A DNA stretch of 64,000 bases, taken from contig NC_083412.1 in NCBI RefSeq assembly GCF_020745735.1, forward strand, positions 66,616,320 to 66,680,319, in the 5' to 3' direction. Shown piece by piece: positions 1-46,239 of the stretch (positions within the stretch are counted from its first letter, which is position 1; every line of letters begins with the position of its first letter). This DNA comes from Hemiscyllium ocellatum. Lineage: Eukaryota. The position numbers were made by a program, and so were the translations under genes. The notes under the pieces were generated by a model that made no database searches, was not told the DNA's origin, and saw nothing but the letters and a program-made list of their open reading frames with translations.

Positions 1-1230
1 ACTGAATTGATACAGATGAGATCCTGAGAGGACTTGACCAAGTGGATGTTGAAAGCATGTCTCCTCTTATAGAGCCATAGTGATGGAGTCAAAAAGCATG
101 GAAACAGACTCTTCAATCCAACCGGTCCATGCCGATCATAATCCCAACCTAAACTATTCCCACCTGCCTGCACTTGGCCCATATCCCTCCAAACCTTTCT
201 TATTCATGAAGTTATCTAAATGTCTTTTAAACATTGTAACTGTACCCATATCCACCACTTCTTCTGGAAGTTCATTCCACACATAAACCACTCTCTGTGG
301 TAAAGGAAAGTGTCCCTTGTGTCTTTTTTAAATCTTTCTTCTCTCACCTTAAAATATGTCCCTAATCTTGAAATCCCCCACCCTTAGGAAAAGACACCTG
401 CCATTCACCTTATCTACATCCTGCATGATCCTATAAAGCTCCATCAGGTCACCTCTATGCTCCGATGAAAAAGTCGCAACCTATCCAGCTACTCCTTATA
501 ACTCAAACTCTCCCTGTCTGACAGATTTCTGGTAAATCTTTTCTGACCCCACTTCAGCTTAACAATATCCTTCCTAAAAAATGGTGACCAGAACTAGACA
601 CAGTATTCCAAAACAACCATCACTAATGACTTGTACAACCTAAACATGACATCCTAACTCCTATTATCAAAGGTCTGAGCAATGAAGGCAAGTATGCTAA
701 ATGTTTTCTTAACCACCCTGTATAGGTGTAATATGAATTTCAGAGTTATGCACTGAACCTCTAGGTCTCTCTGTTCTATAACACTACTCAAGCTCTATTT
801 TGAATTGTCTAATTCCTGCCCATGTTTGTTTTACCAAAATGCAATACCTCATGTTTCTCCAAATTAAACTCCATTTGCTACTCCTCAGTCCATTGACCCA
901 ACTGAGCACATGTGGGAGAATCTTAGAAATAGGGTCATAGTTTTAAAATGATGGAGTGCTCGTTTAAAACAGAAATGGGGACATTTATTTTTCTCTCAGA
1001 TAGTTGTGAGTCTTTGGAATTCTCTTCCTAAAAAAGTAATGGATGCAAAATCTTTAAACACTTTAAAGGCAGAAATTGATAGACTTTTGATTAACAAGCG
1101 GGGGGAAAGATTATCAGGGATACCCAAGAATGTAGGGTTGAGGTTAAATTCAGATCAGTCACAATCTTATTAAATGGTGGAGAAGCCTCAAAGGGGTGAG
1201 TGACCTATTCGTGTTCCTTGTTCATGTATA
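1..1230 (+). mobile_element. Old CR1 LINE 3' fragment split by a younger CR1 insertion (pieces about 1-69 and 909-1230)
   Basis: The two flanks join into the CR1 RT C-terminus and 3' UTR (aaagcatgtctcctctt...gtgggagaatct). Confidence 0.6.
70..905 (-). mobile_element. CR1/HER1 LINE 3' fragment
   Basis: Tail catggaaacagactcttc...cctgcacttggcccatatccctccaaacc is shared with copies at 16367, 41333 and 61225. Confidence 0.75.
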
Positions 1231-2059
1231 ACTGCTGCCTCACCCACCTCAAAATGCATTGATTTAAACATGTCTGAAGCATAAAGCTGGGCCTTTTGGA
1301 TAGTAGGAATAATTAATACCCTTTGAAGTGGCTGAGTAAATCATTCAAATGTCTTTAATATTGAAACAATGCTCTAAAATGTAACAATGCTCCAAGATGT
1401 TTGCCAGAAATGTAAAAAGAAAGAATCCTTGTTCAAACGAAATGGTATTGGAAGGGGCCATTAAATTTCATTCAAGGAATTGAGTAATAAAGAGGGCTTT
1501 AAAGGAGGACTTGTAAATTGGAGAGCTTTAATCAAAGAAATTATAAACATTGGGGTTTAGCAGCAGAAGATAAAACTTTCAATTGTAAGAAAATGAAGGG
1601 AAAATGAAGAGGCTAGGATCAGAGGAAAGGTGAGATCAGTGATTGAAGAAGTTGGATTGAAGAAGGGACAGAGATAGGAAAGGGCAATGTCATACGGGAT
1701 TTAAAGACAAGAGATTCTGTGGCTATGATCGGACAAATAAGAATAGAACTAAATGAGGATAGTCATACTTTACAGGACCAAAATATAGCAGTTGTTGGAA
1801 ATGAGAAATGAAAACAGGAAATGCTGGACACATTCAGGAGGTTTCAGCAGTCTCTATACTGATAGAAACAGATTTAATGGACTGAATTTGGTACAAGTAG
1901 CAGAGGTCCCAGCAAGTGCCACAGGAATTGAGATCAAAAACAGAAGGTAACCCTACAGCTGAACCTAGACGAGCAGATTACCAGCAACAACACGTCATTC
2001 CAAAACAATTTAGGATTAAAATAAGGTTAGATTTAAGTCTGAGAACCATGACCACTTAC

Positions 2060-2164
2060 TTGAAATTGAACGTGTACAAAGTACTGCAACAACCACACAC
2101 GCAATCGATACAATTAAACCGCTAACTATTAGTAATATCCACAATTGTCTGTTACTCGCAGAAT
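2060..2164 (-). CDS. IgSF receptor exon 4: transmembrane segment (DSASNRQLWILLIVSGLIVSIACVVVAVLCTRSIS)
   Basis: Acceptor ttctcaacag| and donor TCAA|gtaagt; 105 nt, phase 1-1. About 23 uncharged hydrophobic residues, in frame with C1. Absent from the supplied ORF track. Confidence 0.85.
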
Positions 2165-2545
2165 CTGTTGAGAATTATGGAGGACACGCATTACAAACTA
2201 TGTTGAGTAACATACCGTAAAGCAGAACTTAAGAGTTTACCCATTTTGTTCTAATATAATTAAATGGAGATATTAGAGTGGATGTACAAAAGCTGAATCA
2301 AAGAGATAACTTTAAAGGAAAATCTTTTAAAAAAGGCAGAGGAGCAGAAGTTGAGAGATGGAATTACAGATATTGAAGCATACGATTAGGAGCAAAAGTA
2401 GGACACACGGACCCAAGAGGTTGCTCTGAAACTCAATAAGACAAGACTGATCTGACAAGACAAGACCCAAAGATCTTGCTTAAGAAGAATCTATGCCTTA
2501 AAAATAATCAAGGACTCTTTGTCCACCACCTTTTCAGGATGAGAG

Positions 2546-2822
2546 TTAGATTAGATTAGATTACTTACAGTGTGGAAACAGGCCTTTCGGCCCAACAAGT
2601 CCACACCGACCCGCCAAAGCGCAACCCACCCATACCCCTACATTTACCCCTTACCTAACACTATGGGCAATTTAGCATGGCCAATTCACCTAACCCACAC
2701 ATCTTTGGACTGTGGAAGGAAACCGGAGCACCTGGAGGAAACCCACGCAGACACGGGGAGAACGTGCAAACTCCACACAGTCAGTCGCCTGAGTCGGGAA
2801 CTGAACCCGGGTCTCAGGCGCT
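2546..2822 (-). mobile_element. HE1 V-SINE, 5'-truncated
   Basis: (TTAGA)n tail, ccacactgta 3' end shared with the CR1 tail, and central V-domain ggaaacccacgcagacacggggag. Confidence 0.85.
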
Positions 2823-3019
2823 CCGTGACCCTCTGTGAGCAAAATAAATTCTTCTTACTCTGGCTTAAATGGATCCCTTGTTCTACATTCTCTTGCAAGA
2901 GGAAACATTCTAACCACATGCAGTCAGGTAAAACCCACCATCTGTGGTTATCTAAAAAATGGTTAAAGATAGTATCAAACTTCAAAAAAAATGTTTATAT
3001 AATTGCACACGAGTGGGTG

Positions 3020-4150
3020 GCAAGTCGGGGGGTTTAAATAGCAACAAAGACTGACTAAATGTATAATGGAAAGTCTAGTACGAGGGCAAGACAGCTGGAA
3101 ACATAAAATGAGATAATAATGTGTTAAAAAAAGTTTCTGTAGAAAGTGCATCTGAGGAATTTATAATAGGAAATAAGCAGATAGAAGATTAATTGAACAG
3201 GTAATTTTCATTAGCATACAGATCTGGATCATGCTGTGTGGAGGACAATAGCAAATATTGCAGATGGTACTCAACTTGGAAGAATTATAAACTGTGAGGA
3301 GGACAGTGTGAAGGTCCAAAAGGACACTGACAAGTTGGTATGGTGGGTGGATAGGGGTGGATGATGTTCAATGCAAAAAGTGTGGGGTATTGAACTTTGG
3401 TAAGACAAGCATTGAAAGACAATATAAAATATGCTGACAATTCTAAGGAGGGGCTGTAGGAGCACAGGGGCATGGGTGTATATATGCACATATCATAGAA
3501 AGTGGCAGAACAGGCAAGAGAGCAGTCAATAATGCAACCAGAATCCTCAGCTTTATTAAAAGGGATATAGAGTAGAATGTAATGTTGAACTTGTATAAGA
3601 CATTTGTTAGAGCTCAGCTGGAGTGTTGTGAACAATTGTGGGTGCCACAACATAGGAAGGATGGGGACACATAGGAAAGAATGCAGAAGTGGTTTACAAT
3701 AATGCTTCCAGGAATGAGGAACTTCAGTTTTGAGGATAGCTTGAAGAAGTTGGAATTTTTCTCCTTGGAGAGAAGGCTAAGAGGAGCTATAGTGGAGGTT
3801 TTCAACATCATGAGTGAACTAGGTAGATTTGATTTGGAGAAATTGTACCCCCTCATAAAAGGATCAAGAACAAGAAGCCATGGATCTAAACAGATCTGTA
3901 AAGCAAGCAAGAATGAAGTGAGGAAAAGCTTTAAACTCAGTGAGAAATTAGGGTATGGAATACACTGCCTGGGAGTATGGTGGAGAAAGGTTTAATGTGG
4001 TCAGCCAAGGGGGTTTCAGATGATTATTTGGACAAAAGTCATATGCAAGAGTGTAGGGACAAAGCAGGATATTTGCTGTAGATAACTTTGCTAATTTAAT
4101 GAGCCACTGCAGGAATGATGGGCTGCATGGTCTCCTCTTGTGCTATAATA
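3020..4150 (+). mobile_element. CR1 LINE RT C-terminus and 3' UTR, decayed
   Basis: ORF 3681-3995 reads LPGMRNFSFEDSLKKLEFFSLERRLRGAIVEVFNIM, a CR1 thumb region. Confidence 0.75.
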
Positions 4151-4989
4151 TTTCAGTGATTCTGCAAATTCCTTCATAAGTGAAATCCATGAGGCTCAAG
4201 GACCTTTAATTGAACAAGGAGAGAATCTAAGACAAGGATCTTCAATGCAGCAAACTATCAATCTTTTAAATCCAAAAATGTGGCATTCTGGAAGAATAGT
4301 GCAACCTCCAGATACCAAAGCTTGCAAACTCAGAGCCTTGAAAGGTAGCAATAGGGTAGTGGTAAATGTAATTATACACACAAATATATAAAAACTAATC
4401 AAGCTTCAAGTAAAAAGCTTGAAGAGAAATGTTCTACATAATCTGAAATGGACTGAAAACATTAATACTGAAGAGTGCTATGAGCACCTCCCACTACGGT
4501 GTTATTTGAACTTGTAGACACAATGGATTGTGATCACGAAGGAGTGAGATCTACACCAGCTCCTCCTCCAAATCTCTGTAACAATGTCTGTCATATCAAT
4601 GTAACCTACAATAAACTAATTTTGTTAACTAGAAGAGATGCTTATGATGAGACCAGGAAGTGGTTTTCATTTACCATACTAGACCAAGTAGGCCCTGTTG
4701 TTTCCTACAGATAAAGAGAATATTGGCAACCTCCTTCAACATGAGAGGAGCTCTTATAGCATGTTGAATTGGCATACCCAACAGCTAAAGTCACCACAAT
4801 CCCACTCTCCCATTAGAGAGAGCAGACTGGTGTTAGTTTAAACTTAGGGTCATCACTCCTCAGGTGAGGGGTGAGGTTGAAAAGGTCCAGCAAATGAACC
4901 TGCCCTGTTGGTGTAACTCTGCATCACAAACCAGTTGTCCAATCAATCCCTATACCCATTCCACATAGTATTGACTGTCGACAAAGTTG

Positions 4990-6290
4990 TCTGATAACTT
5001 AGTGGTAGTCGATGAGCCAAGCTAAGCGGGTGTAGAACAAAGCCAGGTGTCATCTGCTTAGTGAAAATGAACAGTTTGCTTTCCTATGATGATGCCAAGA
5101 GATGGTGTAGTTAAGAAATAGCTGCAGGATCAGCTTTGCTTGACAGGGGTAATAATGTGGAAATGTGAAGAGTAGTTATTGCAGTCAATCCTCTGAATCT
5201 GATAAGAGGCATTTCGATACTATGACAATGTGGAGATGTAGGGCATTAAGGGTCAGATAAATGATTATGGGTTTCAAACGTAGCTTGCTGGGAATGGGCA
5301 TGGATTCAGGAGGTTGACAACTTAACAGGTTTTCAGAGGAAAAGGCAGTTCACTGGAAATGGTGCGGCTCTGATTTGCAAGGTTAATGGTCTCAGGGCTT
5401 TCAGTTTGTGGAGAGAGACTTTCTGGAAAATGGGCCAGAACATTAAGAGGGTGAATCACAGAATCCATACAGTGTGGAAACAGGCTCTTCAGCCCAACAT
5501 GTCCACAATGAACCACCGAACAGTAACCCACCCAAACCCCTTCCCCTACTCTATATTTACCCCTGACTAATGCACCTAATCTTCACAACCCCGAACATTA
5601 TGGGCAATTTAGCACAGCCAATTCGCCTTACCTGCACATCTTTGGACTGTGGAAGGAAACCGCAGCATCTGGAGGAAATCCAAGCAGAACAGGGAGAATA
5701 TGCAAACTCCACACAGGCGGTAGTCTGGGGCTGGAATCGAACCTGGGTCCCTGACACTATGAGGCAGCAGTGCTAACCACTGAACCACTGAATTATTAAC
5801 AATATTGGCTGAAGTGGGGTTCAGGAGAGGAAGCTGTGTGTTCAGTACTTTATGAGGAATAGAGGACAATGGGAATCTTGTCTGCAAGATGAACGCAGAG
5901 GCAGTCAGAGGAAGGTTGGGTAGGAAACTCAAAAAAAGATGCAATTTCAAAACTCACACTGGGAATTACTTTGGTGGAAGTTTGCCCCATTGGCTCGTAA
6001 AAGAGAGAGATGGGACAGAGCTGTTGATAGGTTTAGCTTGATTTTAGTGACCAGGTTCCGGATGAGGGAAAGTAATTGTTGGCGACTAGGATATTAAAGG
6101 TAGAGCGAGGGTATAATTGAGTGAATCAGTAGCTGCAGACATATTGTTGCAAATCAAGTAGCAAAGACTAGATAGGTGGCATTTGGAAAGTACAGTTGGA
6201 AATGAATTGTCTAAGTGGACAGTGAGAATGGCAATTTTTAGACACGGAAGGCTGATATAGGTGGAGAACAATTCAAGGAGTGATACCAGA
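4990..6290 (-). mobile_element. L2-like LINE remnant interrupted by an HE1 SINE
   Basis: Minus strand near 5040-5075 reads HFH*ADDTWL (YADD motif). Heavily decayed. Confidence 0.4.
5455..5790 (-). mobile_element. HE1 V-SINE
   Basis: tRNA-like head (gtggttagcactgctgcctca, ggttcgattcc), V-domain and CR1-type tail. Confidence 0.8.
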
Positions 6291-6421
6291 ACCACATTCA
6301 TGTAGTAACATTACTCAAGTCATAAAAGTCAAAAGAAAATTAGAATCACAATTCAAACTACTGCCAGTTTGCAAAGTCCAGAGATTTTGCCAACAAATCA
6401 ATGACTGAAAATGTTTCTTAC

Positions 6422-6727
6422 CTTGGTTACAAACAGAAATCTTTTCAGTGGTGGATACAGACAGTGTTGGGTGGTTCACCTGACAGGAATATATTCCACT
6501 TTCATTCCGCTCAAATACAGAAAGATTCAGGAAACTTGTGGTGGAGAATGAGCCATCACTGTTAGTGTGGAGAGTCTCATTCTTAATGCCATTGGTGATT
6601 AGCTGTCCATCTTTAAACCAGGACACTTGAATGTCATCAGGGTAGAATTCCTGTGATGTGCAGATTAACTCTCTCCCTTGATTAGGGTAAGGCTGAGCCC
6701 TTTCAATTAACTGGACAGTTGGCCGAG
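6422..6727 (-). CDS. IgSF receptor exon 3: C1-set constant domain
   Basis: Acceptor aactttcag| and donor CAAG|gtaaga; 306 nt, phase 1-1. C1-set signatures LICTSQEFYPDDIQVSWFKDG, NSDGSFSTTSFLNL and YSCQVNHPTL. Confidence 0.93.
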
Positions 6728-7609
6728 CTGAAAGTTAATTGTAACATGTTATTAGACCTCTATACTTCAGTCTGCTTGTCAGTTTGCATTGAATAGTTTC
6801 AAGGACTTATTGATGATCCACAGTGAGAAATTTTGAACTGTCAACTATGTGTGTATCAGATAAATAAAAGGCTAGTAATTGCAAATCAGAGGGGCTGGCA
6901 TCATGGATCAGTTGATGCCTTAAGACTCACTAGGAAGCATTTTCAGGTGAGCTTGTAATTTGGTAAGCAGTCTACCTGCCTGAAACGAGCAAGAGGTGGG
7001 AACGAAGGAGACCTTTCAGTGCATCAAACCATTCCAGTTCCCTGTAAAAACAATTCAGCTTGTCCCATATCATCATCCTTTTCCCATAGTTCTGCAGTTT
7101 TTTTTCCCTCCTGGCACTCATACAATGCCATTTTGAAAGCCAGAGGCAAACCTGCCTCCACCACACCACCATCCATACAATGGATATGAAATATTGATGG
7201 CAAACTGCCAAAAAGAACTCCTTATGTGACCTTTTGCTCAACATTTTAAATCAATATTATCTTGTTTGTGACCCATTTGCCAATGGAAATTATTTCCCTT
7301 TATCTATCATAACTAGATTCCTCATGTTTTTGGCCACCTCCATCAAATCCCCATTCAATCTTCTTAATGATTGTTTGGTGATATATAAAATGCAAGCTGA
7401 TCTATGGGTTCTATTGGCAAGGTGAGCATGTGTTGCCCATCTCTAATTGTACTGGAGAAGCTGGCTTTGAGCAGTCCATGTGGTGTTGATGGCACACCCA
7501 TTATGCTGTTAAGAAGGAGATCCAGGAATTTGACAATGAAGAAATGATGGTATAGCTCCAGTCAGGATTGTCCTGGGCTCGGAAGGAAACTGACCTATGG
7601 CAGATGAAC

Positions 7610-7942
7610 TATAGAATCCCTACAGTGTGGAACAGGCCTTCTGCCCAACAAGTCCACAGCCATCCTCTGAAGATTAACCTACCCAGACCCATTCACCTAC
7701 TACTCTACATTTACCCAGATTAAACCACCTAAACCTGAATACTGTGGGCAATTTAGCATGGCCAATTCAACTAACCTGCTCATCTTTGGATTGTGGGAGG
7801 AAACTGGAGTACTGGAAGAAAACCACGCAGACATGGGGAGAGTGTGTAAACTCCACACAGACAGTTGCCCGAGGTGGGAGTTGAACCCAGGTCACAGGTT
7901 TACTGCAGCAACAGTGTTAACTACTGAACCACTGTGCCGCCC
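7610..7942 (-). mobile_element. HE1 V-SINE
   Basis: Full head-to-tail similarity to the other copies. Confidence 0.8.
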
Positions 7943-8006
7943 TAAGTAGCAAAAGGGTGGGAATGGAGACATTTCAGTCCATCTAGAACTGTTTCCATGC
8001 ATCTTG

Positions 8007-8490
8007 GGACAGTAATAGCCTAGTGATATTGTCACTAGACTATGAATCCAAAGATAATGTCTCAGAGACATGGGTTCAAACCCAACCATAGCAGATGATG
8101 GGATTTGATTTTGATTAAGAGTCTAATGACCATGTCGCAACTACTGATTGTCAGGAACACTCATTTGGTTCTTTAGGAAAGAAAACTGCCATCCTGTCGT
8201 GGTTTGGCCCACATGCAACTCCACACCCAATATGGTCTTGGCTCTTGTCACTGCATTCTTTATATGGCTGATCCAGTTCAGTTTCTGATGAATGATAACC
8301 CCCAGGATGTTGACGGTAGGGGATTCAGTGATGGTAATATCATGGAATAATAAGGGGAGATGGTTAGATTCTCTCTTGTCGGAGATTTCCTGACACTTGT
8401 ACAACTCAAATCTTTCTTAACAGCCCAATCTGAATGTTATGCATTAGGACATGGGCTGCTTCAGTATCTGAGGAGTTGAGGATGGTACAC
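8007..8490. mobile_element. Second tRNA-derived SINE family (plus, about 8007-8245) abutting a CR1/L2-superclade LINE RT fragment (minus, about 8250-8490)
   Basis: B-box-like gggttcaaacccaacc. LINE frame reads ITESPTVNILGVIIHQKLNWISHI, also seen at about 43000-43330 and 58740-59290. Confidence 0.55.
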
Positions 8491-9018
8491 TTAGTTGCAT
8501 AGTTATACAGAAGTTGAATATTTCTGAAAATAGAGAAATCTCACCAAAACTTTTTATCTTGCTCTGATCAGGGCAAAAATAAGAATGACATACTTCAACC
8601 TTTGTGACAAGAGAGAAGAGTATAGATTGGTTGGCAAATCAACTCTTTTTGGTTAAGTCATAGCTATAGAGAAAGTAATGGGGGACTCTAGGCTCTTTGT
8701 GCTCCCAGATTTTCATAAAATGCACAAGGCTTAATAGTATTCCTTTTGTTTGTGGAGTCTATTAGATGTAATTTTGTGAAAAAAAGTTGCTGAAACCCTC
8801 CTCTGAGCTTTTGTTACCTGTCAGCTTAAATATTCCAATGTGCTAGGAGGATGTTTCCTGCCATGGGAGAATGAAGGACTAAAGGGTACAGTTTAAAAAT
8901 AAGGAAGTCTCAAATTAAGATGGAAGTGTAAAGGAATTTCTTCTCTCAGAAGGCTGTTAGGTTTGGAAACCAACACAATGAATGCTGAAGAAACTGGCAG
9001 CATCTTTGGAAAGAAACA

Positions 9019-9053
9019 GTTAATGTTTCAAGGTCGACATGACTCTTCTTCAG
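9019..9053 (-). ncRNA. Degenerate PLE-type minimal hammerhead motif in intron 2, sense to the Ig gene
   Basis: CTGAAGA-A-GAGTC-ATGTC-GACCTT-GAAA-CATT. Core present, stem II imperfect, ACGT palindrome decayed to ACAT. Confidence 0.4.
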
Positions 9054-9289
9054 TGTTTGGAATTCTTTTCTCTGGAAAACAATGGAGACTGAATAACTGA
9101 CTTTACTCAAGGCTGAATAATTGAGGTTATTATCAAATCAGGTATAGTCTGAATGTGGAGAAGAATCAATGTGCCAAATGGCTCCTATTTCTAAAGATTT
9201 TTTGAAGTTTGTCTTGATTAGCCTCTTACCTTGTCCCCTGCATAAATTTTGCCTTATCCCTTAGTCAGTTGTTCTAATATAGATCCAGT

Positions 9290-9700
9290 TGCTCTCACCC
9301 ATTCCCCATGCCCTTTGAATTCTATTGGCTCCCAGTGCAGAATGTTCTTAATTTTGAAATTCTCAGCCCTGTTTCAAATCCCTGTAAAACTTTATCTTTC
9401 TATCCATGTAATCTCCACCACACTCAAGATATCTGTGTTCCTCTAATTCTGGCCCATTCTGCATTCCCAGATTTTAACACTACAAACTTGTTTTCTGACC
9501 CTTTAGATAAGAAGGCCTGAAGTTCTGTAATTCCATACACCCCTCTCTTCCTTTAAGACTTTCCTTTACAGCTAAACTCTGATCATGTTTTTGCTTATCT
9601 ATCCTAATACCTACTATGTGTAAAATTTGCTTTGGAAGTTCTCTTTTGAAGTGGCTCGAGCTGTTTAAGATGCTACATAAACACACATTGTTATTGGAGT
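9290..9700 (+). mobile_element. L2 LINE 3' end
   Basis: ctattggctcccagtgcag...ttttgaaattctc...gatgctacataaa matches the vertebrate L2 3' pattern. Confidence 0.55.
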
Positions 9701-9902
9701 TACTGCGATATGTAGAGAATTGCTGTTGGTGATGTATAAACCTCACAATCAACCTCTACTTCTGAACCAGGCAACCAGGGTTAAAGCCTCACCCACTCAA
9801 GAGTTGCACAGTAACATGTCTGAACAGGTTAATTAGAAAACATTTGAGAACTGAGGAATGATAAAACTGCTGTGTTTTTTGAATTGTAGATATAAAACAC
9901 AC

Positions 9903-10262
9903 CTTGTACTATAATGCGTGTACCTTTGCCAGTTGCTGATTTTGAAGGAGGTGGGATTTCAAAATTAACCTGACAGAAGTAAATATCAGAGTCGTTTAAA
10001 TGAAGATTGTAGATTATTAAGGATGAGGATTTTGTTGAAGCGTTCTTCGTAATGTTAGCACGTTCTGTGCAATGTATGATCGAAGAACAATTAAATGTAT
10101 TTTCCACGCGATGGCAGAATGTTTGTGTACTGCTGTTTCTCTTCCACGTAATTCGGAATTGTTCTACCGTATCACTGTATGAACAATTTATTTGTATGTT
10201 GTCCCCCTTCAACGCTCTGATCTGTGATGGTTCTTGGAAGACTGTTAGATTTCTGCTTCTCA
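9903..10262 (-). CDS. IgSF receptor exon 2: V-set domain with germline-joined J-like G strand
   Basis: Acceptor ttaatttctttag| and donor CAAG|gtgtgt; 360 nt, phase 1-1. Has B-strand Cys (IQINC), C-strand Trp (RITW), LxIxNLxxNDSDIYFC and GKGTRIIV. Confidence 0.93.
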
Positions 10263-11984
10263 CTAAAGAAATTAAGAAACAAAAATGATTAACAATGTAT
10301 AATTTCTGATCAGGAATGAATGTTTCGTATGTCCGGGTGTAGTTTATAGTTTAGTGAACTGAGTCAATTCAAAGACATTATGAATCTTTTTTGCTGAAAA
10401 GAAGTAAATGAAATTGGATGTCTTGCTGACTTTATAGGAAGGTAATAGCAGGAGTAAGTCATTCAGCTTCTCAAGCCTGCTCTGGTATTTTAGATCATGG
10501 TTAATCATCTTCCTTCATATCACTTTCTCACAATCTACCCATATCTTCGACATTGTTAGTAATTAGAAATCGATCAATGTCTCTTTTAAACTTACTTTCA
10601 TACCCTTCCAGATAGCAAATATCAAAGTATCATTACCTTCCAAGTGAAGAAATTCCTCCTCATCTCAGTTCTAAATTGCTTACCCCCACAGCCAAGGGAA
10701 CCATCCACTCTGTCTATCCCTATAAGAAGTTAGTATGCTTCTATAATCATTCTTCTAGTCTCCAGTTTCGTCCCATCTTTCTTCATAAGACTGACCCACT
10801 ATCCTAGCTATCAGGCTGGTGGACCTCTATTACACTCCTTCTATATACCTTCCTTAAGCAAAGGTACCGGAACTGTACACAACACTCCAAGTACAGTCTC
10901 ACCAGAGACCTATACAGTTCACCATAAAACCATTCGACATAGGAGTAGAAGTAAGCCATTCAGCCCATCTGCTCAGACATACAATGAGACCATGACTAAT
11001 CTCATAATCATCAACTCCACTTTCCTGCTTTCTCCTTATAACCCTCAATTACCTTACTGATTAAAAATTTATCCATCTCACCTCAAAACTATTTAATGAT
11101 CCAAACTTGACAGCTCTCTGTGGCAAAGGATTCCAAAGATCCATTGCACTCTGTAAGAAGAAATTCCTAATAATTTCTGTCTTAACTGGGCGGCACCTCA
11201 TTATGCCCTCTGGTCCTAAATTCTCTCACAAGTTGGGACAATCTCTCTGCATCTGTTCTGTTATTTCCCTAAGGATCTTATATGTTTCAATAAGGTCATA
11301 CCTCATTCTTCCAAACTCTAATGAGTACAAGCCCAATCTACTCAATATCTCCTCATAATGTAATCTCTCCATACGTGGTATCAACATAATGAACTTTCTC
11401 TGGGCTATCTCCAATGTCAGTATAACTTTCCTTAGATAAGGGACCCCAAATGATTAACAGTATTCCAGGTGGATTTAACTGGTGCCTTGGATAATATATA
11501 GCAAAAGCTCTCTAATTGTATACGTTATTTTCTTGGAAATTAAGGCTAATGTTGCATTTGCCTTCCATATTACCTGCTAAATATTTATGTGGTTCATGGA
11601 CAAGGACTCCCAAATCCCTCTGTGATATAGTATTCAGCCCCTCTACCGGTCAAAGTACAAAACTCCACGTTTTTTCCCATTATATTTTATCTGTCAAATG
11701 TTTGCCCAGTTGCTTAACTGGCTTATATCCCTCTGCAAACTCATCCTCACTATATGGCTTTCCATCTATTTTTATGTCATCCACAAATTTGGCTGTAACA
11801 CATTCACTTTCAAATAATGAAATCCATGTTGCAAGTAACTATGGCTCTAGCAATAATTCCTGTGGCAATCTCTTAGTTACAGGTTGCCATCCTGAAAATG
11901 CCCCGTGTCCAAACTCACTGCCTTTTATCCCCTCTTCATGTTACTCCCTCCAGCACCATAGGCTTGTTTTTAATTACTCACAGG

Positions 11985-12265
11985 ATACGGATGTCTCTGG
12001 CTAGGCCAGCATTTTTGTGCATCCCAAATTGCCCAGAGTCAACCACATTGCTGTGGGTCTGGAATCACATGTGGTCACATGATGGCAGTTTCCTTCTCGA
12101 AAGGGCATTAGTGAACCAGCTGGGCTTTTTGACAATGATTTTGTGGCCATCATCAGAATCTTAATTCCAGGTTATTTTGTCTTGAATTCAAATTCCATCA
12201 TCTGCCTGGATGGGATTTGAACCCTGTCCCTAAAACTTTAGCTGAATTTCTGGGTCATCGCCTCC
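11985..12265 (-). mobile_element. Second SINE family copy nested in CR1
   Basis: gggatttgaaccctgtccc head and gccagcattt...cccaaattgccc tail; related copies at about 47200-47530 and 50405-50720. Confidence 0.6.
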
Positions 12266-12544
12266 CCATAGTCTTATTCAGTTTCATTAAGTGGATGAAT
12301 GTGTAGCAACTTACCAAATGCCTTCTGGAAATCCACATATATTAGACCCACTCCTTTCTCTTTTTGTATTCTTTTTGCTATCTCATCAAAGAATTCTATT
12401 AGATTTGTCAGATATGATTTTCCCTTCGTGAAGCCATACTGATTCTGCTGGATTAGATATTTGCAAATGTTCTGCTGTTATAAACTTTATAATACATTTT
12501 CTTACATAAGAGATAAATGAGACCTTTATCTCTCCACCCTTCAG

Positions 12545-12635
12545 GCACTCTGCCTGTATTCCTGATGAAGGGCTTTTGCCTGAAATGTCGATTTTCCTGC
12601 TCCTCGGATGCTGCCTGAACTGCTGTGCTTTTCCA
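12545..12635 (+). mobile_element. PLE family A short fragment with hammerhead-like motif (core 12562-12589)
   Basis: CTGATGA-A-GGGC-TTTT-GCCT-GAAA-TGTC followed by gatgctgcctgaactgctgtgcttttccagca. Confidence 0.7.
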
Positions 12636-13429
12636 GCACCATTCTTTTCCATAAATTTAAAGACTCCCTTGCAGCTAATCTTCATGTTACTTGCAAGTTT
12701 ACCCTTATCCTTTCCATTTTTTTTGGTGTTTACAACTTTCCCAATCCTTTGGCTTACCACTAATCTTTGCCACTTTGCATGTTTGTTTCTGTGCTGTACA
12801 ACTCTATGACTCGAAACAATAGGGTTACATGTGCAACCTTCTGACCTTTAGGCATCATTGCCTAATTATTAGAATTTTGAAAGATGATCAGTAAGGCATC
12901 CAATATCTCTGTAGTCATCTCTTTCAATACTCTACAATGAAGGTCAGCAGGTCCCAAGGGATTTGTCAACTTGCCATCCCATTAATTTTCCAACCTGACT
13001 TTTTTACTAATACTAATTTCTTTCAGTTCCACACTCTCACTAGACTCTTGGTTTACTGACAAAAGTATTCCTGTGTTTTGCATTGTGAAGAAAGGCACAA
13101 AATACCTATTCAGTTTTCCTGCCATATCCATCTTTCCTATTTTTAATTCTCTTGTGTTTGCCTGTAATGGAACCACATTTGTCTTTGCTAATCATTTCCA
13201 TTTCTCTTCTCTATAAAAGCTTTTAAAGTCTGTCTTTATGTATATTGCTGTTGTATGCTCATATTCTATTGATTCTTAAATTCTACCAATTCTCAGGCAT
13301 GCAATAGTTTTTGGCAACTCGATAAGCCTCCTCCCTGGCTCCTTTGCCTTTCCTATTGGGTATCTTTGCCTTATAATGTATATATTTTCGAAGTGAATGT
13401 TTTGATTCTTTAAATAATAGCCATTGTTT

Positions 13430-13733
13430 TAGATTAGATTACTTACAGTGTGGAAACAGGCCCTTCGGCCTAACAAGTCCACACTGACCCGCCAAAGCGC
13501 AACTCACCCAGACCCATTCCTCTACATTTATCCCTTCACCTAACAGTACGGGCAATTTAGCATGGCCAATTCACCTAACCTGCACATTTTTGGACTGTGG
13601 GAGGAAACCGGAGCACCTGGAGGAAACCCATGCAGGCACGGGGAGAATGCAAACTCCAGTCAGTCGCCTGAGACGGGAATTGAACCTGGGTCTCTGAGGC
13701 AGCAGTGCTAACCACTGTGCCACTGTGCCGCCC
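13430..13733 (-). mobile_element. HE1 V-SINE nested in CR1
   Basis: Full-length, little-diverged copy. Confidence 0.85.
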
Positions 13734-16366
13734 AGTTTAATGTACTGTCAAACCAAATAATATATTTTCGATCCACCTACCAGAGCCAACCCTCTCCTTG
13801 TCACTTTATAATTGCCTTTGTTATGATTTAGATCCTAGTTTCAGATTGAACTACAAATTTTTCTAACTTAATGGAAAATTCTGTAAAACTATGGTCAATA
13901 TTAAAGTTTGTATTACACAGGATTACCAATTAGTCATTTCTCACCGCCTAATGCTAAATATAAAATAGCCAGTACCTCAGTTGGTTCCTCAACATATTTC
14001 TTCAGAAATTTATCATGCACAAGCAATCTTCCTCCACAGCATTACAGAACATCAGATTTACCAAGACATAATCTAGATCAAAATCATTCAATTACAGCAA
14101 TCCCCTTGCTAAATGTATGTTTAATTTCCTGAATTACGTCGTGCCCTACATTATCGCCACCTGTTTTGTGACCTAAAAAAACACTCCTAGTGTTTGCTGC
14201 CTTTTGCTGTTTCTTACTTCACAGAAACTGCATCATGTTCTTCCAATCAGTGATTCTCTCTTACTGATACACTGATCTTGTTCATTATTAATAGTATCTC
14301 CTTTCCCTTTTCGCCCTCTCTTCTGAATGTCAGGTATGCATTAATATTCAGTTCCCAATCTTTGTCACTCTGCAGCTACATCTTCATACTGGCAATAATA
14401 TCACAACCTTTCATTTCACCGATGCCACCAATTCACCTATTTTGTGAATGTTGTGGGTACTCATATAGAGGAATGGTGTCTTTTTAGCACTATTCTATAA
14501 TTTGATCCTAGTTAATTTTAGAATTTGTTTCTCAATGCTTTTCACTTTCAATTACAGCTTTTCTACTTCCAATAACCAGCTTTGTTTTTATCTAAGTTTC
14601 CTCTTAGGTTCCCAGGCCCAGACAAGTAGTCTTAACTGTCCACAACAGCATGAGCAAATTTCCCTGTGATAGTATTAGCCCAACTTTTGTTAAGGTGTAA
14701 CCCATTCTCCTTTTAGAGATCTCCCCTGTCCCAAAAGCAGTCCCAATGTCTGAAAAATTTAAAGACCTCCCCTTGCGCCATATTTCCAACTGCATATTCT
14801 TTCAATCTTTTCGTCATTATGATCCCAGCTGATGGTAATTCTGGGCAAGTCAAATCATAGAGTGCCTTGATAGATCATAAATTCTACTTTTATATGATAG
14901 TTACTATTATGATTAGTTACTGAATATATTCACATAAGGTTGTCAATTTTTTTAGATGAAGATAATGTGCTTATTACACAAAAGGCAAAGAAAAAACAAT
15001 ACATATCAGACAATTTAGAAAGATTTTAAGAGCAAAAAGGGTTAAGGCCTTCCTCTGCAATATTCTTTACAAACACTGAACCCTACTGAAGTGTCACCGC
15101 TATCGTAACCCTCTTTATTACTCTTTCTTAACTCTGAATGTTGCAGGCATTTCCTTTCCATTACTTTGTATATCAGATGTCAATCTCTCTATTACTGTCC
15201 CTCTCTGAGATATACAGGCACCGGCTACTTCACTGACTTTTAGTAACTAACTGTAAAAAAAATCCTGTCTAAAACAGGGTTTTAGACTTCTTTCCAGCTC
15301 TGAAACCAGGTTTCTCAGAATCTAAATTACCCTTCTTCTGGTATGAAATGGGTCAACTGAAACCTGATTGTGACCCTGTTCTGTCACTCTATATATTATA
15401 AAAGTACAACTTTATAGACATTTCATTAATTAACTGCACAGATATCCAATCATTTCACTTTAGTCTCATGCTTTCTTGGAAATAATGTTTGAACTTGCTG
15501 TTCAAAATTACTTTCTGAGAACAGAACTAAAAAAAACACATTAACTTCTACTGCTAAATCCAAGTTCCCAACTGATATTAACATATTCTAAACTATTGTC
15601 ACACTTTTTGTATACGTACTAGTATGTGATACTGGGAACTATTCCGAGATTACTGCCTTAGTGGTCCTGGTTTTCAGTCTTTTGCCTAGCTTCCTAAATT
15701 CTCCTTTCAGGACCTCATCCCTTTTTCTACTGAGGCCATTGGTCCCACTTCATACCATGACTTCTGACTGTTCACTCTCCTCAAAAGAATGCCATGTAGC
15801 CACACTGTGGGAGCCTTGAACTTTCACCAGGGAGACAGCATGCCATTCAGTTGTCACTGAAGTTGCCTTAGAAATGCCTGTCTGTTCCCTGAACTATTGA
15901 ATCACCCACCGCTATTGCCAGTCCACCTCCCCACCCCCCCACCCCCACCCCCAACCCTCAGTGCAACTGAATCACTTGCTGTGACAAAAACCTGGCTCTC
16001 GTTACATTTCTCAGATGAACCATTGACCTCATCAGTTTACAAAACAAATTTGTGAGTGAGATAGATACAAGGGATTCTTGTACTACCTGCCTGCTATTTC
16101 TAGACAGCCCAGTAGTTAACTTTTCTTCTTTGGTCTTAATTAGCAGTCTTAATCACATAGCTCTTAGCTTTACTGATACACCATCACTCCAGCTGCGGTT
16201 CAGATTTCAAAAGCAGGAATTTGAGATCTTGCAGCTGAAGGTGCTTCCTGCATATGTGATCATCTAAGCCATGCGAAGCATCCACTGTTCCCAAAAATGA
16301 TAGGCATTTCACATAATTGAACTGTCCTGCCAAGCCTTAACTTATTCAGACCTTCCAGTATCAATA

Positions 16367-16921
16367 TAGAGTCTTAGAGTCATAGAGATGTACAGCATGG
16401 AAAGAGATACTTCAGTCCAATTCATCCATGTCGACAGATATCCTGACCTAATCTAGTCCCACCTGCCAGCACCTGGCCCATATCCCTCCAAACCCTTTCC
16501 ATTCATATGCCTTTTAAATGTTGCAATTGTACCAGCCTCCACCACTTTCTCTGGTAGCTCATTCCAGACATGCACCGCACTCTGTGTGAAAAAGTTGCCC
16601 CTTAGGTCTCTTTTACATCTTTCCCTGCTCACTCTAAACCTATGCCCTCTACTTCTGGACTCCCCGACCCTAGGGAAAAGACCTTGTCTATTTACCCTAT
16701 CCATACCCTTCATAATTTCATAAACCTCGATAAGGTCACCCCTCAGCCCCCGATGCTCCAGGGAAAACAGCCCCAGCCAATTCAACCTCTCCCTATAGCT
16801 CAAATCCTCCAACCTTGGAAACATCCTTGTAAATCTTTTCTGAACCCTTTCAAGTTTCTCAACATCATTCCGATAGGAAGGAGACCAGAACTGCATGCAG
16901 TATTCCTAAAGTGGCCCGAAC
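16367..16921 (-). mobile_element. Young 5'-truncated CR1/HER1 LINE
   Basis: Uninterrupted ORF 16453-16896 (QFWSPSYRNDVEKLERVQKRFTRMFP...) and (TAGAGTC)n tail. Confidence 0.9.
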
Positions 16922-17387
16922 AATTTTAAATGACATCTTTTGTTTCCTTGTTTTGAGTTTGCAGTTTTCATTGTTTTATGCTTGACTTTGCAATTTCTTC
17001 CATCTGACCTCCCTTTGTCACTTTTACAATGTAATAAGAAATCCCAAAGCACATGATTGAAATAAAAGACGAGCAGCTATTTGAGCAGCAATTAGATGAG
17101 GATTAGGCTATGTGACCGAGGCACGACCAAAGGGTTAGATTTTGAGAAGGCTTTATGCACCCAACATAAGAAGGAAAGAAACATTGATATCAATATCATG
17201 GAGGTTTTGGATGCATTTTTTAAATGACTTTGCGACCAATGCAGTGGAATTATGTCCAATGATTTATAAAGTTAAAGTAAGGAACATTTCTGTTTTTCAG
17301 AAAACATATCTATCATTTCTTTCCTCCTCCTGAAATTCATCGTGACTGCAGTTACCCAGTAATAATGTTAGACCAAATAAACCATAC

Positions 17388-17451
17388 CTGCAAGTAGAAA
17401 AAAATGAAGCAAAACACAAAGTTTGAATACTTGCGTCCCCAGAGATGTCAT
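17388..17451 (-). CDS. IgSF V-C1-TM receptor, coding exon 1 (signal peptide MTSLGTQVFKLCVLLHFFLLA)
   Basis: ATG at 17451 with A at -3. 21 codons plus 1 nt with a hydrophobic core, then donor GCAG|gtatgg. Phase 1 joins the V exon to give LLA-V-RS/RNLTV, a plausible cleavage site. Confidence 0.75.
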
Positions 17452-19415
17452 TTTATCTGTTTCATCCTGAAGATATAAGAGAAACCATTAACTTTGATAA
17501 AAGAATGAATACTTGGCTTTATGTTATATATGCTATATGTTACAATTTATTGCAACATTTTACACTATTAACATCAAGAAATGTTCCAGATACTTCACAA
17601 ATAAGTATTGGTGACATTCAGATTGAGATTTGCTTCATTTGTGCAAGGTGTGTAAATATTGCTGGCTGGCCCAGAATTTATTGCCTGTTTTTTTGTCCAG
17701 GGCCTGGGTCTTGGTCATTTGACCCTCAAATCTCAATCTTATCCAATCTTATGTGTGTTTTTTTTTATTTATACTGATTTCGATGTTATGGGATAGCCAT
17801 TTGAACGTCTTTGATTTTAATGTGTCTTAGTGAATAAATGTTAAATCAGAGCACTACGTTCTTGAGAAACCATAAAATTAAAGGGAAATAGATTTAAATT
17901 ATTTCAACTAGGTCTTGCTTTTCGGCACCTGGACAGAAGTGTTTGTTAGAATATTTACCATAATTTTATCTGACACACCCAGTTTCAGGTGCATGAAGAG
18001 TAAGTTTTGCTCTGTAGATTTTATAACCTGAGTGCAAGAGGTTATCTAAAATTCTCATGACCGGGGATATAAATTCTAATTCTGTAGTTCCTGATGGAAA
18101 TCAATAGACATATTAGAAACAGTTCATCGCTCTGGTTCACTATTTTCCAGACAACCAAATTATTTATTTCATAGTGACAATATCAAACCTTTTCAAATTT
18201 CCTCTTTTGACAGATGAATTCCAAAGAATTGGACTGGAACCAGTTTACCTGGTTAAACAACATTTTGACTACATGCTTTTGTACTATTTACATTCCTTCA
18301 TTTAAGGTGGAGATTTTGAAAATATTTCTGTGATTTTTTTGGATCACGCCCCTGATGGGCACTCACAGTCAACTGCCAAGTTCCAAAAAACTGAGCTATC
18401 ATGCCACACTTTAGAGAGTTCCAACTTCCTTAACTGGATAGTTACTTATAAGGATTAAAACCAGTCATAATTCCTTGACAACCACACTTCTGACCATCTC
18501 CCCCACACTAAACTCCTCACTGACTCACCCTGACCTTGTGTTCACCCCCCAACAATTACCATTCCCAATCCCCCTGACTCAACAAGGCTACTGCCCCCTT
18601 AGCCAGTGATACTAGCCCATCAACCCTTCCCTTTAGTCTGACTTCACTGTGCCCCAGACCTGACTTGACTATTCCCATAACCTGACCTACTCTAATATAC
18701 GCTATCTTCCTCAGTCCTCACCCACCTGCCACTCTATTTTCTCATTCATCCATCTGCCACTTTATCCCTTCACTAACCCACTTGCTAATCCACACCCTCA
18801 CTCACCTACTGTATGCAAACTCACCCACCCACCTGCCAGCTAACCCTTCCCTTAATCACTGACCCACTAACCTGCCATCCTAACCAGCACCCAGTGCACA
18901 TCCTTCTCTTATCCACCGGCCAATTTGCTCCCTCACCAACTTACCTTCTTTCTATAACCTTTCCAAGAGGCTTTGGATGTTTTAACTGTATTAACTTACT
19001 GGAATACATGAGCTATTATTGTAAATACAAGTGTTGGGTTTAGATTCCACAAAAAATATCTATGATCTTCTATGTAAAGATGCTTGTGCGTTGAGACTCA
19101 GGCTGATAAATTACAGAGAAGTAATTGTGCAACCTACTGTCTAATCTTGGTCAGAAATAGGGATTCCAACTGTGATCAGAAGTTTTGTGCCCTGACCTGA
19201 TCTCTAAGGCACTGTAATTGCATGCCAATCATCAGGACCTAAAACAATTCAACCTAACTCTAGGGGCTGGTATTTCTTCCATTCCTAATGAAGGGCTTTT
19301 GCCCAAACATCGATTTTTCCTGTTCCTCAGATGCTGCCTGACCTCCTGTGCTTTTCCAGCACCACTCTAATCTTCAGTACTCACTTCTGCCATTCTTTCA
19401 TACAGTCTCAGATAA

Positions 19416-46185: not shown

Positions 46186-46239
46186 ACTAAGCAGTCAAAT
46201 TTGGCAAACTCATAACATATATGGTAATGAATAAAATGA

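What the first reader, a model, noticed from the sequence alone, without database searches (positions are those of the whole stretch)
2060..17451. Non-rearranging antigen-receptor-like gene: leader + germline-joined VJ + C1 + TM
Seen: four minus-strand exons with GT-AG, all phase-1 introns (7125, 3175 and 4257 nt) splice into 278 codons without a stop. The V exon already contains its G strand (GKGTRIIV), and no recombination signal lies at its 3' end. Established: C1-set domains are largely confined to Ig, TCR, MHC/b2m and a few V-C1 relatives (tapasin, SIRP, B7-H6), and sharks belong to the oldest living lineage with RAG-based immunity. Inference: this is an intact, probably uncharacterised innate-type VJ-C1 membrane receptor, relevant to the origin of antigen receptors. 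The ORF track shows only the V and part of the C1; the leader and TM exons were found by reading splice signals.
Basis: partly seen in the sequence, partly recalled or inferred. Interest (0 to 1): 0.78.

Follow-up and report, generated by a model that had tools for sequence, protein, structure and literature searches.

The report
Shark CD28H-like V-C1 inhibitory receptor gene
This is a real, intact shark gene for a surface receptor that joins a CD28/CTLA-4-type binding domain to an antibody-type constant domain; its family is old, runs from sharks to reptiles, is auto-annotated under misleading names, and appears undescribed.

Summary
Four minus-strand exons (leader, V with built-in J, C1, TM) splice with AG/GT in phase 1 into 278 open codons. 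No recombination signal is present.

The TM exon also ends in phase 1. A fifth exon, the tail, lies about 0.9 kb beyond the window start. I inferred this from the collinear bamboo-shark locus, and it matches scan note s1-236450.

The gene is under purifying selection against bamboo shark (dN/dS 0.28, P=0.001).

It is not SIRP, tapasin, B7-H6, UrIg or UrIg2. It belongs to a small family found in sharks, rays, chimaera, sturgeon, gar, bowfin, teleosts, lungfish, turtles, tuatara and alligator. Databases name its members inconsistently.

The V domain carries the CD28H/CTLA-4 loop signature (YxCQxxxEIPPP-x5-GxG). Its nearest outside relatives are CTLA4-like, CD28-like and TMIGD2 proteins. Unlike every described CD28-family member, it also has a true C1 domain.

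Elasmobranchs hold two clades. Clade A, which includes this gene, has an uncharged TM and a (V)IYSLLGQ tail. Clade B has an arginine in the TM and no tyrosine motif. That suggests an inhibitory/activating pair.

The scan logged other "SIRP-like V-C1" genes in this genome; this small EIPPP family seems separate, but I did not compare them.

The parts
17388..17451 (-). Exon 1: start codon and most of the signal peptide (21 codons + 1 nt). The last leader residues are on the V exon, i.e. a split leader.
   Evidence: 100% conserved over 21 aa in bamboo shark L001 11103-11166
10263..17387 (-). Intron 1 (7125 nt, phase 1, GT..AG); holds SINE and LINE fragments
9903..10262 (-). Exon 2: V-set domain with germline-joined J-like G strand (GKGTRIIV), extra Cys pair and 7 N-glycosylation sequons
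   Evidence: Pfam V-set 2e-13 and ICOS-type V-set_2 3e-9; AF2 model pLDDT 92.3; dN/dS 0.23
9922..9981 (-). FG-loop signature YFCQVNFEIPPPSKSATGKG, matching the CD28H/CTLA4-type motifs YxC[EKQN]xxxEIPPP and YxCx6PPPx5GxG
   Evidence: regex and alignment; motif definitions in PMC11599192; IPPP invariant in 21 family V domains
6728..9902 (-). Intron 2 (3175 nt, phase 1)
6422..6727 (-). Exon 3: C1-set domain (…LICTSQEFYPDDIQVSWFKDGQ…YSCQVNH…) ending in a membrane-proximal Cys (SVCNQ)
   Evidence: Pfam C1-set 7.6e-19, 68 bits; 97% aa identity to bamboo shark, dN/dS 0.14
2165..6421 (-). Intron 3 (4257 nt, phase 1)
2060..2164 (-). Exon 4: short stalk plus uncharged transmembrane helix (LWILLIVSGLIVSIACVVVAVLC) plus first cytoplasmic residues; ends in phase 1 at a gtaagt donor
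   Evidence: hydropathy maximum at residues 253-273; TM helix in the AF2 model of the orthologue
1..2059 (-). First 2059 nt of intron 4. The last coding exon (125 nt, tail ending in the tyrosine motif) lies about 0.9 kb beyond the window start.
   Evidence: no tail match in the window; window position 1 corresponds to L001 29448, and the tail exon's coding part ends at L001 30471; scan note s1-236450, unverified

Best explanation
Window 2060-17451 (minus strand) holds the first four of five coding exons of an intact, selectively maintained gene for a type I membrane glycoprotein of about 319 aa. Its layout is signal peptide, one V domain with a germline-joined G strand, one C1 domain, an uncharged TM helix, and a short tail ending in one tyrosine motif (V-x-Y-S-L-L-G-Q in the orthologue, a canonical ITIM).

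Shown: the gene structure, its conservation and purifying selection, and its membership of a small gnathostome-wide family (chimaera, sharks, rays, sturgeon, gar, bowfin, teleosts, lungfish, turtles, tuatara, alligator). The V domain carries the CD28H/CTLA-4 loop signature (EIPPP, then GxG), and its closest outside relatives are CD28-family receptors. The elasmobranch family splits into a tyrosine-tail clade (A, this gene) and a clade with an arginine in the TM and no tyrosine motif (B).

Inferred: the EIPPP loop is the ligand-binding edge, as MYPPPY is in CTLA-4/CD28, and probably contacts a B7-family ligand. The C1 domain acts as a spacer and possibly a dimer interface; in this species there is also a membrane-proximal Cys. 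On ligand binding the tail tyrosine is phosphorylated and recruits SHP-type phosphatases, so this gene would be the inhibitory partner of an inhibitory/activating receptor pair. In evolutionary terms it is a CD28H-type V exon joined to a phase 1-1 C1 exon. That could be either the ancestral V-C1 form of the CD28H lineage or a later exon-shuffled derivative.
For: Gene structure and open frame. Domains: Pfam V-set, V-set_2 and C1-set; AF2 V model pLDDT 92; orthologue model with SP, V, C1 and TM.

Conservation: window and bamboo-shark locus are collinear at about 94% nt identity. All 8 splice sites are kept and there are no indels or stops. There are 14 synonymous and 14 nonsynonymous changes, dN/dS 0.28, P=0.0013 against neutrality.

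Tail exon. Its 125-nt coding length and position agree with scan note s1-236450.

Family and orthology. The tree follows the species tree, with the window inside clade A. A cDNA-derived chimaera record (NP_001279395) and intronless Logan contigs show that family members are transcribed.

CD28-type V: the signature matches against the definitions in PMC11599192. The next-best V domains in 1.8 billion proteins are CTLA4-like, CD28-like and TMIGD2. The V tree groups the family with them (SH-aLRT 93). The top structural hit is human CTLA-4 by Foldseek and PD-1 by VIA-align.

Paired clades: with the clade B locus. B7-H3/H4-like gene 7.6 kb downstream, co-oriented, in chimaera.
Against: The last exon is outside the window, so its intactness in this species rests on an unverified scan note.

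The epaulette-shark protein did not appear in protein searches.

The canonical ITIM (-2 position I/V/L/S) is present only in galeomorph sharks and a salmonid. Family-wide, only Y-x-x-L/V-G is conserved, which could equally be an ITSM-like or an AP-2 sorting signal.

The ligand is unknown. B7 adjacency was shown only in chimaera. It was not seen within 10 kb in bamboo shark, sawfish, catshark, devil ray, turtle, bowfin or sterlet.

Structure and PDB profile scores do not separate CD28-family V domains from TCR or antibody V domains. The V tree is weakly resolved.

The extra Cys pair is shared with gerbil TMIGD2 but not with the shark CTLA4-like proteins.
Confidence: 0.72

Rival explanations
1. 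It is an ordinary member of the large 'SIRP-like V-C1' receptor families that the scan has already logged many times in this genome, with no special relation to CD28.
For: Scan notes list many VJ-C1-ITIM genes on other pieces of this genome and one 7 Mb away. RefSeq names several family members 'SHPS-1/SIRP-like'. The layout V-C1-TM-ITIM is the same.
Against: The V search found only 27 cluster representatives at E<=1e-10 in 1.8 billion proteins. This family has 2-3 genes per genome plus orthologues in bony vertebrates. IPPP is invariant. SIRP V is absent from the top 60 PDB hits, and SIRPA aligns at 14% identity and TM 0.30. I could not fetch the other families' sequences to compare them directly.
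Confidence: 0.12
2. [quoted passage not shown]
For: PRARP is cited as a non-rearranging VJ gene. From memory only: it was reported with an ITIM tail and in bony fish, amphibians, reptiles and birds but not mammals, which resembles this family's range.
Against: The paper is not held, so no sequence comparison was possible. PRARP is described as lying in the MHC, whereas the green-turtle gene lies at 189.9 Mb on a 348-Mb chromosome, another turtle's gene model is fused to RPL7, and the bowfin gene is next to TIPRL. Bony-vertebrate members of this family lack the GxG J motif. No bird or amphibian member was seen.
Confidence: 0.13
3. The conserved tail tyrosine is mainly a YxxΦ endocytosis/sorting signal (as YVKM is in CTLA-4), or an ITSM-like switch, and not an ITIM. 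The receptor would then act by ligand capture or competition, or would signal positively.
For: Family-wide, only Y-x-x-L/V is conserved. The -2 residue is A, T, G, C or P in most lineages. The V domain is CTLA-4-like.
Against: This gene's orthologue and other galeomorph sharks have a canonical V-x-Y-S-L-L. A sister clade with a charged TM and no tyrosine is the usual partner of an ITIM receptor.
Confidence: 0.2
4. It is a recently inactivated or never-expressed gene copy that merely looks intact.
For: There is no RNA evidence for this locus and no matching protein in the collections. The bamboo-shark GenBank model is mis-spliced.
Against: There are no stops or indels in 278 codons in two species that differ at about 6% of neutral sites. 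All splice sites are conserved, and dN/dS is 0.28 with P=0.0013. Orthologues exist across sharks and rays.
Confidence: 0.05

Closest known systems
CD28H (TMIGD2) and its paralogues CD28HL1-3 (Quiniou et al. 2024, PMC11599192)
   Same: FG-loop signature YxC[E/K/Q/N]xxx-E-I-P, here in the E-I-P-P-P form that the paper calls possibly primordial. GxG in the G strand. The extra Cys pair aligns with gerbil TMIGD2. The V domains are the nearest outside relatives. All introns are phase 1 here; from general knowledge CD28-family genes run leader/V/TM/tail, so this gene would differ by one extra exon.
   Different: It has a C1-set domain between V and TM, whereas the paper states that every family member has a single V domain. 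There is no YxxxxT motif in the TM. The tail motif is (V)IYSLLGQ, not YxNx or YEDM. None of that paper's synteny marker genes was seen in the flanks examined (window and fetched loci).
CTLA-4 / CD28 / CD28X
   Same: YxCx6PPPx5GxG with PPP and GxG in the canonical positions. Human CTLA-4 is the top Foldseek match of the V model. Shark 'CTLA4-like' proteins are among the best V hits.
   Different: E-I-P-P-P instead of M-Y-P-P-P-Y. It has a C1 domain and a different tail. Only 24% identity to human CTLA-4.
SIRP alpha/beta (paired V-C1-C1 receptors)
   Same: A VJ-type V followed by a true C1-set domain. There are ITIM-tailed and charged-TM forms with similar ectodomains. RefSeq often names family members 'SHPS-1-like'.
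   Different: One C1 domain, not two; one tyrosine motif, not four. The V is not SIRP-like.
UrIg and UrIg2 (Flajnik et al. 2023, 2025; PDB 9dmx)
   Same: Non-rearranging single-exon VJ, split leader, true C1 domains, cartilaginous fish.
   Different: UrIg has a V plus 3 C domains and is secreted. UrIg2 has a V plus 9-11 C domains plus a TM. UrIg2's top rank in the C1 search comes from summing three domains; its best single domain scores 38 bits, against 52-57 bits for Ig constant domains and SIRP-gamma D3. UrIg2 V is not among the best V matches.
PRARP (Fu et al. 2019)
   Same: Non-rearranging VJ IgSF gene. From memory only: an inhibitory motif, and absent from mammals.
   Different: Not testable here. 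PRARP is described as lying in the MHC, and from memory its chicken form has a single V; this family is V-C1 and was not seen near MHC genes.

Membership tests
CD28 family (CD28, CTLA4, ICOS, CD28H, CD28HL1-3, CD28X, PD-1; Quiniou 2024) | V-domain FG/CDR3 loop motif: YxC[EKQN]xxxEIP(PP), or YxCx6PPPx4/5GxG | tested here: met
   YFCQVNFEIPPPSKSATGKG at window 9922-9981. Definitions read. IPPP is invariant in the family.
CD28 family (CD28, CTLA4, ICOS, CD28H, CD28HL1-3, CD28X, PD-1; Quiniou 2024) | [quoted passage not shown] | tested here: not met
   A C1-set exon (68 bits, E 7.6e-19) lies between V and TM. It is kept in all family members.
CD28 family (CD28, CTLA4, ICOS, CD28H, CD28HL1-3, CD28X, PD-1; Quiniou 2024) | V domain clusters with CD28-family V domains and not with Ig, TCR or other V domains | tested here: inconclusive
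   The best non-family hits are CTLA4-like, CD28-like and TMIGD2, and the tree groups them (SH-aLRT 93). However, the tree is weakly resolved, many rows are unnamed, and PDB profile and structure scores do not discriminate.
CD28 family (CD28, CTLA4, ICOS, CD28H, CD28HL1-3, CD28X, PD-1; Quiniou 2024) | YxxxxT dimerisation motif in the TM (CD28, CTLA4, some CD28X) | tested here: not met
   The TM LWILLIVSGLIVSIACVVVAVLC has no Tyr.
CD28 family (CD28, CTLA4, ICOS, CD28H, CD28HL1-3, CD28X, PD-1; Quiniou 2024) | Family-type cytoplasmic tyrosine motif (YxNx, YEDM, YVKM, or ITIM+ITSM) | tested here: not met
   The orthologue's tail has a single VVYSLLGQ. This species' tail exon is outside the window.
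CD28 family (CD28, CTLA4, ICOS, CD28H, CD28HL1-3, CD28X, PD-1; Quiniou 2024) | Conserved synteny block of one of the nine members (e.g. fsd1/stap2 for CD28H) | not testable with these tools
   There is no other gene in the 64-kb window, and flanks of fetched loci are limited to 10 kb.
SIRP | V-C1-C1 ectodomain | tested here: not met
   There is one C1 exon only, and no further Ig exon in the window.
SIRP | V domain specifically similar to SIRP V | tested here: not met
   No SIRP chain is among the 60 best PDB V matches. SIRPA aligns at 14% identity and TM 0.30.
UrIg / UrIg2 | VJ domain followed by three or more C1-type domains | tested here: not met
   A single C1 domain. UrIg architecture was read.
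Rearranging antigen receptors (Ig/TCR) | Separate V and J segments flanked by recombination signal sequences | tested here: not met
   The J-like strand is inside the V exon. No heptamer lies in or beside the exon.
PRARP (Fu 2019) | Sequence similarity or orthology to chicken PRARP1/2 | not tested
   The paper and its sequences are not held.
Paired inhibitory/activating receptor systems (works-like, not a homology class) | Similar ectodomains, one form with an uncharged TM plus ITIM tail, the other with a basic residue in the TM and a short tail | tested here: met
   Clade A and clade B tails and TMs were compared across 20 elasmobranch sequences. The clades are supported in the tree. The clade B gene lies about 156 kb from the orthologue in bamboo shark. 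Adaptor binding is untested.

The most novel reading that the evidence does not exclude
This family would be the surviving V-C1 form of the CD28H/CD28 lineage. On this reading, CD28-type co-receptors descend from an antigen-receptor-shaped VJ-C1 ancestor that lost its phase 1-1 C1 exon. In elasmobranchs the family works as an inhibitory/activating receptor pair for a B7-H3/B7-H4-like ligand encoded next to it, a class of ligand whose receptors are, as far as I know, still unidentified in mammals.
Probability: 0.2. Interest if true: 0.8.

Novelty: new variant of a known kind. Interest (0 to 1): 0.55.

Why it matters
The most recent survey of the CD28 family (2024) defines its nine members by a single V domain and says the family's origin was not revealed. 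Here is a conserved gene family, present from chimaera to alligator, with the same diagnostic ligand-binding loop (EIPPP plus GxG) but a true C1 domain.

That gives a concrete candidate link between CD28-type co-receptors and the VJ-C1 architecture of antigen receptors. It also gives a testable receptor candidate for B7-family ligands.

The split into a tyrosine-tailed clade and a charged-TM clade would place paired inhibitory/activating signalling on a CD28-like scaffold in sharks and rays.

On the practical side, public annotations name these genes Ig light chain-like, SIRP-like, tapasin-related-like or MHC-like, all of which are misleading.

Tried and rejected
- **Tail exon in the window.** I looked for it in window 1-2059 and found nothing.
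- **Tandem paralogues in the window.** No further Ig exon is present. The rest of the window is repeats and reverse-transcriptase fragments.
- **UrIg/UrIg2 identity.** Rejected on architecture. UrIg2's top rank in the C1 search comes from summing its domains.
- **SIRP, tapasin, TAPBPR, B7-H6 or butyrophilin orthology.** Rejected: 14-23% identity and none stands out.
- **Structure comparison to decide CD28-family versus TCR-type V.** Not decisive. Foldseek puts CTLA-4 first and VIA-align puts PD-1 first, but the margins are trivial.
- **PDB profile search of the V domain.** Generic result: CD28 at 41 bits against TCR and CD4 at 42-45 bits.
- **B7 neighbour outside chimaera.** Not seen within 10 kb in bamboo shark, catshark, sawfish, devil ray, turtle, bowfin or sterlet.
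- **PRARP paper and UrIg 2023 paper.** Not held, and literature searches for a PRARP description failed.
- **The epaulette-shark protein itself.** Not found in the protein collections.
- **The spliced 278-aa protein as a direct query.** Not done, because it has no reference form. I used domain references and orthologue ids instead.


Full report
**Observation.** I rebuilt the proposed gene by script, after reading the exon edges. On the minus strand:
- leader 17451-17388 (64 nt)
- V 10262-9903 (360 nt)
- C1 6727-6422 (306 nt)
- TM 2164-2060 (105 nt)

Each exon is flanked by AG and GT, and every junction is phase 1. The G strand GKGTRIIV is inside the V exon. No CACAGTG heptamer lies in or beside that exon. 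Pfam calls the two large exons V-set (E 2e-13, plus the ICOS-type V-set_2 model above its cut-off) and C1-set (E 7.6e-19). The last leader residues sit on the V exon, the split leader typical of V genes. The ectodomain has ten N-glycosylation sequons, and the TM helix is uncharged.

**The missing 3' end.** The TM exon ends in phase 1 at a gtaagt donor, so the gene continues. No tail exon is present in window 1-2059. The exhaustive V-domain search returned a near-identical bamboo-shark protein (GCC24402). Its locus, L001, is collinear with the window at about 94% nucleotide identity through the introns.

L001 holds all four exons intact, so the GenBank model's internal deletion is a modelling error. 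It also holds a fifth exon about 2.95 kb after the TM exon. That exon has an AG acceptor in phase 1, then 41 codons ending in NDDNVVYSLLGQYPCDI and a stop.

Window position 1 corresponds to L001 29448. The fifth exon should therefore lie about 0.9 kb beyond the window start. Its coding length is 125 nt. Scan note s1-236450 reports a 125-letter ITIM-bearing exon 882 letters before the window. I could not read that DNA myself.

**Is the gene alive?** Between the two shark species the 278 codons show no indel and no stop, and all eight splice sites are kept. There are 14 synonymous and 14 nonsynonymous changes, giving dN/dS 0.28 (V 0.23, C1 0.14). Under neutrality 77% of changes would be nonsynonymous, so P=0.0013. 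Transcription of family members is shown by a cDNA-derived chimaera RefSeq record and by intronless Logan contigs, but not for this locus.

**The family.** V identity of 47-66% marks out a small set of proteins in sharks, rays, chimaera and sturgeon. Searching with orthologues and with bony-vertebrate members adds whale shark, great white, houndshark, sawshark, sevengill shark, devil ray, gar, bowfin, salmonids, cyprinids, lungfish, many turtles, tuatara and alligator. I saw no bird, amphibian or mammal member, but the searches are word-indexed and not exhaustive.

The source names are automatic and contradictory: Ig kappa/lambda light chain-like, SHPS-1-like, tapasin-related-like, MR1-like, HLA-DM-beta-like, or uncharacterized.

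Identity to the window falls with taxonomic distance: bamboo shark 95%, whale shark 81%, great white 67%, catshark 62%, chimaera 47%, sturgeon 39%, turtle and lungfish about 33%.

A maximum-likelihood tree places the window in an elasmobranch clade A that mirrors the species tree. Its sister is an elasmobranch clade B. The chimaera and a bony-vertebrate clade fall outside both.

Across 21 V domains, IPPP is invariant and an extra Cys pair is nearly so. The GxG 'J' motif is confined to cartilaginous fishes.

**What the V domain is.** The FG loop reads YFCQVNFEIPPPSKSATGKG. This fits both signatures given by Quiniou et al. 2024 (PMC11599192):
- YxCx6PPPx4/5GxG for CTLA4/CD28X
- YxC[E/K/Q/N]xxx-E-I-P for CD28H/CD28HL, with E-I-P-P-P in chondrichthyans and reptiles proposed as primordial

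After the family itself, the best V domains in the 1.8-billion-protein library are single-V proteins of 190-265 aa with the same loop. RefSeq calls them CTLA4-like or CD28-like. TMIGD2 (CD28H) of alligator and gerbil comes next, and a TCR-alpha-like chain comes lower. An alignment shows strict collinearity of the loop and G strand. The extra Cys pair aligns with gerbil TMIGD2 but is absent from the shark CTLA4-like proteins.

A 138-row V tree groups the family with CD28-like and CTLA4-like V domains (SH-aLRT 93), next to the CD28H group. TCR/Ig-like V domains lie across the midpoint root. Resolution is poor, with only 121 columns.

The AF2 model of the window's V domain (pLDDT 92.3) has human CTLA-4 as its top Foldseek hit and PD-1 as its top VIA-align hit. 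TCR and antibody V domains follow within trivial margins. A family profile scores CD28 no better than TCR or CD4 in the PDB.

The CD28-type assignment therefore rests on three things: the diagnostic loop, the ranking in the large library, and a weak tree. It does not rest on fold.

**What the C1 domain is.** It is a bona fide C1-set domain without a specific affinity. UrIg2 (9dmx) tops the PDB lists only because three of its domains add up. Its best single domain scores 38 bits. Ig mu, epsilon and gamma constant domains and SIRP-gamma D3 score 52-57 bits.

The full-length catshark orthologue models as signal helix, V, C1, one TM helix and a disordered tail. In the PDB it resembles Fab chains. 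Among reviewed proteins it resembles the general V-C-TM class: CD276, butyrophilins, B7-H6, tapasin, TAPBPR, SIRPA and CD200. All are at 14-23% identity, and none stands out.

**Paired clades.** I compared the region after the C1 domain.
- Clade A, which includes this gene's orthologues, has an uncharged TM and a tail ending (V/A)IYSLLGQ.
- Clade B has a conserved arginine in the outer third of the TM (…VLR…) and a short tail with DDEFE and no tyrosine motif.

In bamboo shark the clade B gene lies about 156 kb upstream of the orthologue, on the opposite strand. A more divergent IPPP paralogue lies about 100 kb upstream. Both are outside this window. This is the pattern of paired inhibitory/activating receptors, though adaptor binding is only an inference.

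The canonical ITIM is present in galeomorph sharks and one salmonid. Family-wide, only Y-x-x-L/V-G is kept, so an ITSM-like or sorting role remains possible.

**Neighbourhood.** In the compact chimaera genome, a co-oriented gene starts 7.6 kb downstream. Its V exon is closest to CD276 (B7-H3, E 8e-17) and VTCN1 (B7-H4, E 4e-15), and it also has a butyrophilin-type C exon. Scan note s1-236450 says a B7 gene also follows this gene in the epaulette shark, which I could not verify.

Within 10 kb, no such neighbour appears in the other genomes checked:
- bamboo shark, catshark, sawfish, devil ray and green turtle show no neighbour
- bowfin has TIPRL as its neighbour
- sterlet has a tandem pair

A receptor-ligand reading is therefore a hypothesis.

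**Known families.** It is not UrIg or UrIg2 (V plus 3 C, secreted; V plus 9-11 C plus TM). It is not SIRP. It is not a rearranging receptor. It fails the CD28-family definition on the single-V criterion while meeting the loop criterion.

PRARP (Fu 2019) could not be tested because the paper is not held. Indirect points argue against identity: PRARP is described as lying in the MHC, whereas the turtle and bowfin loci here are not near MHC genes, and bony-vertebrate members lack the J motif. I leave it at about 13%.

The scan has logged many 'SIRP-like V-C1' genes elsewhere in this genome. The small size of the EIPPP family and its bony-vertebrate orthologues suggest it is a different family, but I did not compare the sequences directly.

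**Verdict.** This is a real, intact, conserved gene. Its V domain points to the CD28H/CTLA-4 lineage more than to the antigen-receptor precursor. I rate it a new variant of a known kind, of moderate interest.

Noticed in passing
L001 10001-30471 (Chiloscyllium punctatum BEZZ01000056.1): GenBank model GCC24402.1 (174 aa) joins mid-V directly to the end of the C1 exon. The genome holds both exons intact, so the deposited protein is a mis-spliced prediction.
   Followed up: yes
L007 16559-16951 and 22135-22437 (Chiloscyllium chiPu_0002799): The clade B paralogue has an EIPPP V exon that the deposited 190-aa model omits, an arginine in its TM, and a DDEFExPC tail conserved in several sharks. It may be the activating partner. 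The function of the DDEFE motif is unknown.
   Followed up: partly
L003 10001-16295 (Chiloscyllium chiPu_0002801): A divergent third paralogue (about 30% identity, loop YIPPP without GxG) has a different tail carrying YVNI, SNYSFI and IYENTF motifs. It lies about 100 kb upstream of the orthologue.
   Followed up: partly
L002 24222-26594 (Callorhinchus milii): A B7-H3/B7-H4-like gene lies 7.6 kb downstream of the chimaera family member, on the same strand. The precomputed Pfam order V-set, C2-set_3, V-set hints at more than two Ig domains. The gene runs off the locus.
   Followed up: partly
window 37152-37895 (-) and 26266-26802 (-): Reverse-transcriptase (RVT_1) fragments of LINE-type retrotransposons in the gene-free 46 kb upstream of the receptor gene.
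   Followed up: partly
window 2570-3037, 5570-5790, 7611-7949, 13435-13742, 19546-19719, 35172-35474, 45863-46234: Many copies (about 70-83% alike) of one SINE-like repeat, whose spurious ORFs share the motif …NLHIFGLWEETG…. Several copies sit in the receptor's introns and carry the only CACAGTG heptamers near the gene.
   Followed up: no
window 17452-17469 (-): Bamboo shark has an in-frame upstream ATG (MDETDKM…) where the epaulette shark has CAG. The conserved start is therefore the ATG at 17451.
   Followed up: partly
window 51750-51784: Another scan note (s1-203675) reports a minimal hammerhead ribozyme in a Penelope-like fragment here. I did not examine it.
   Followed up: no
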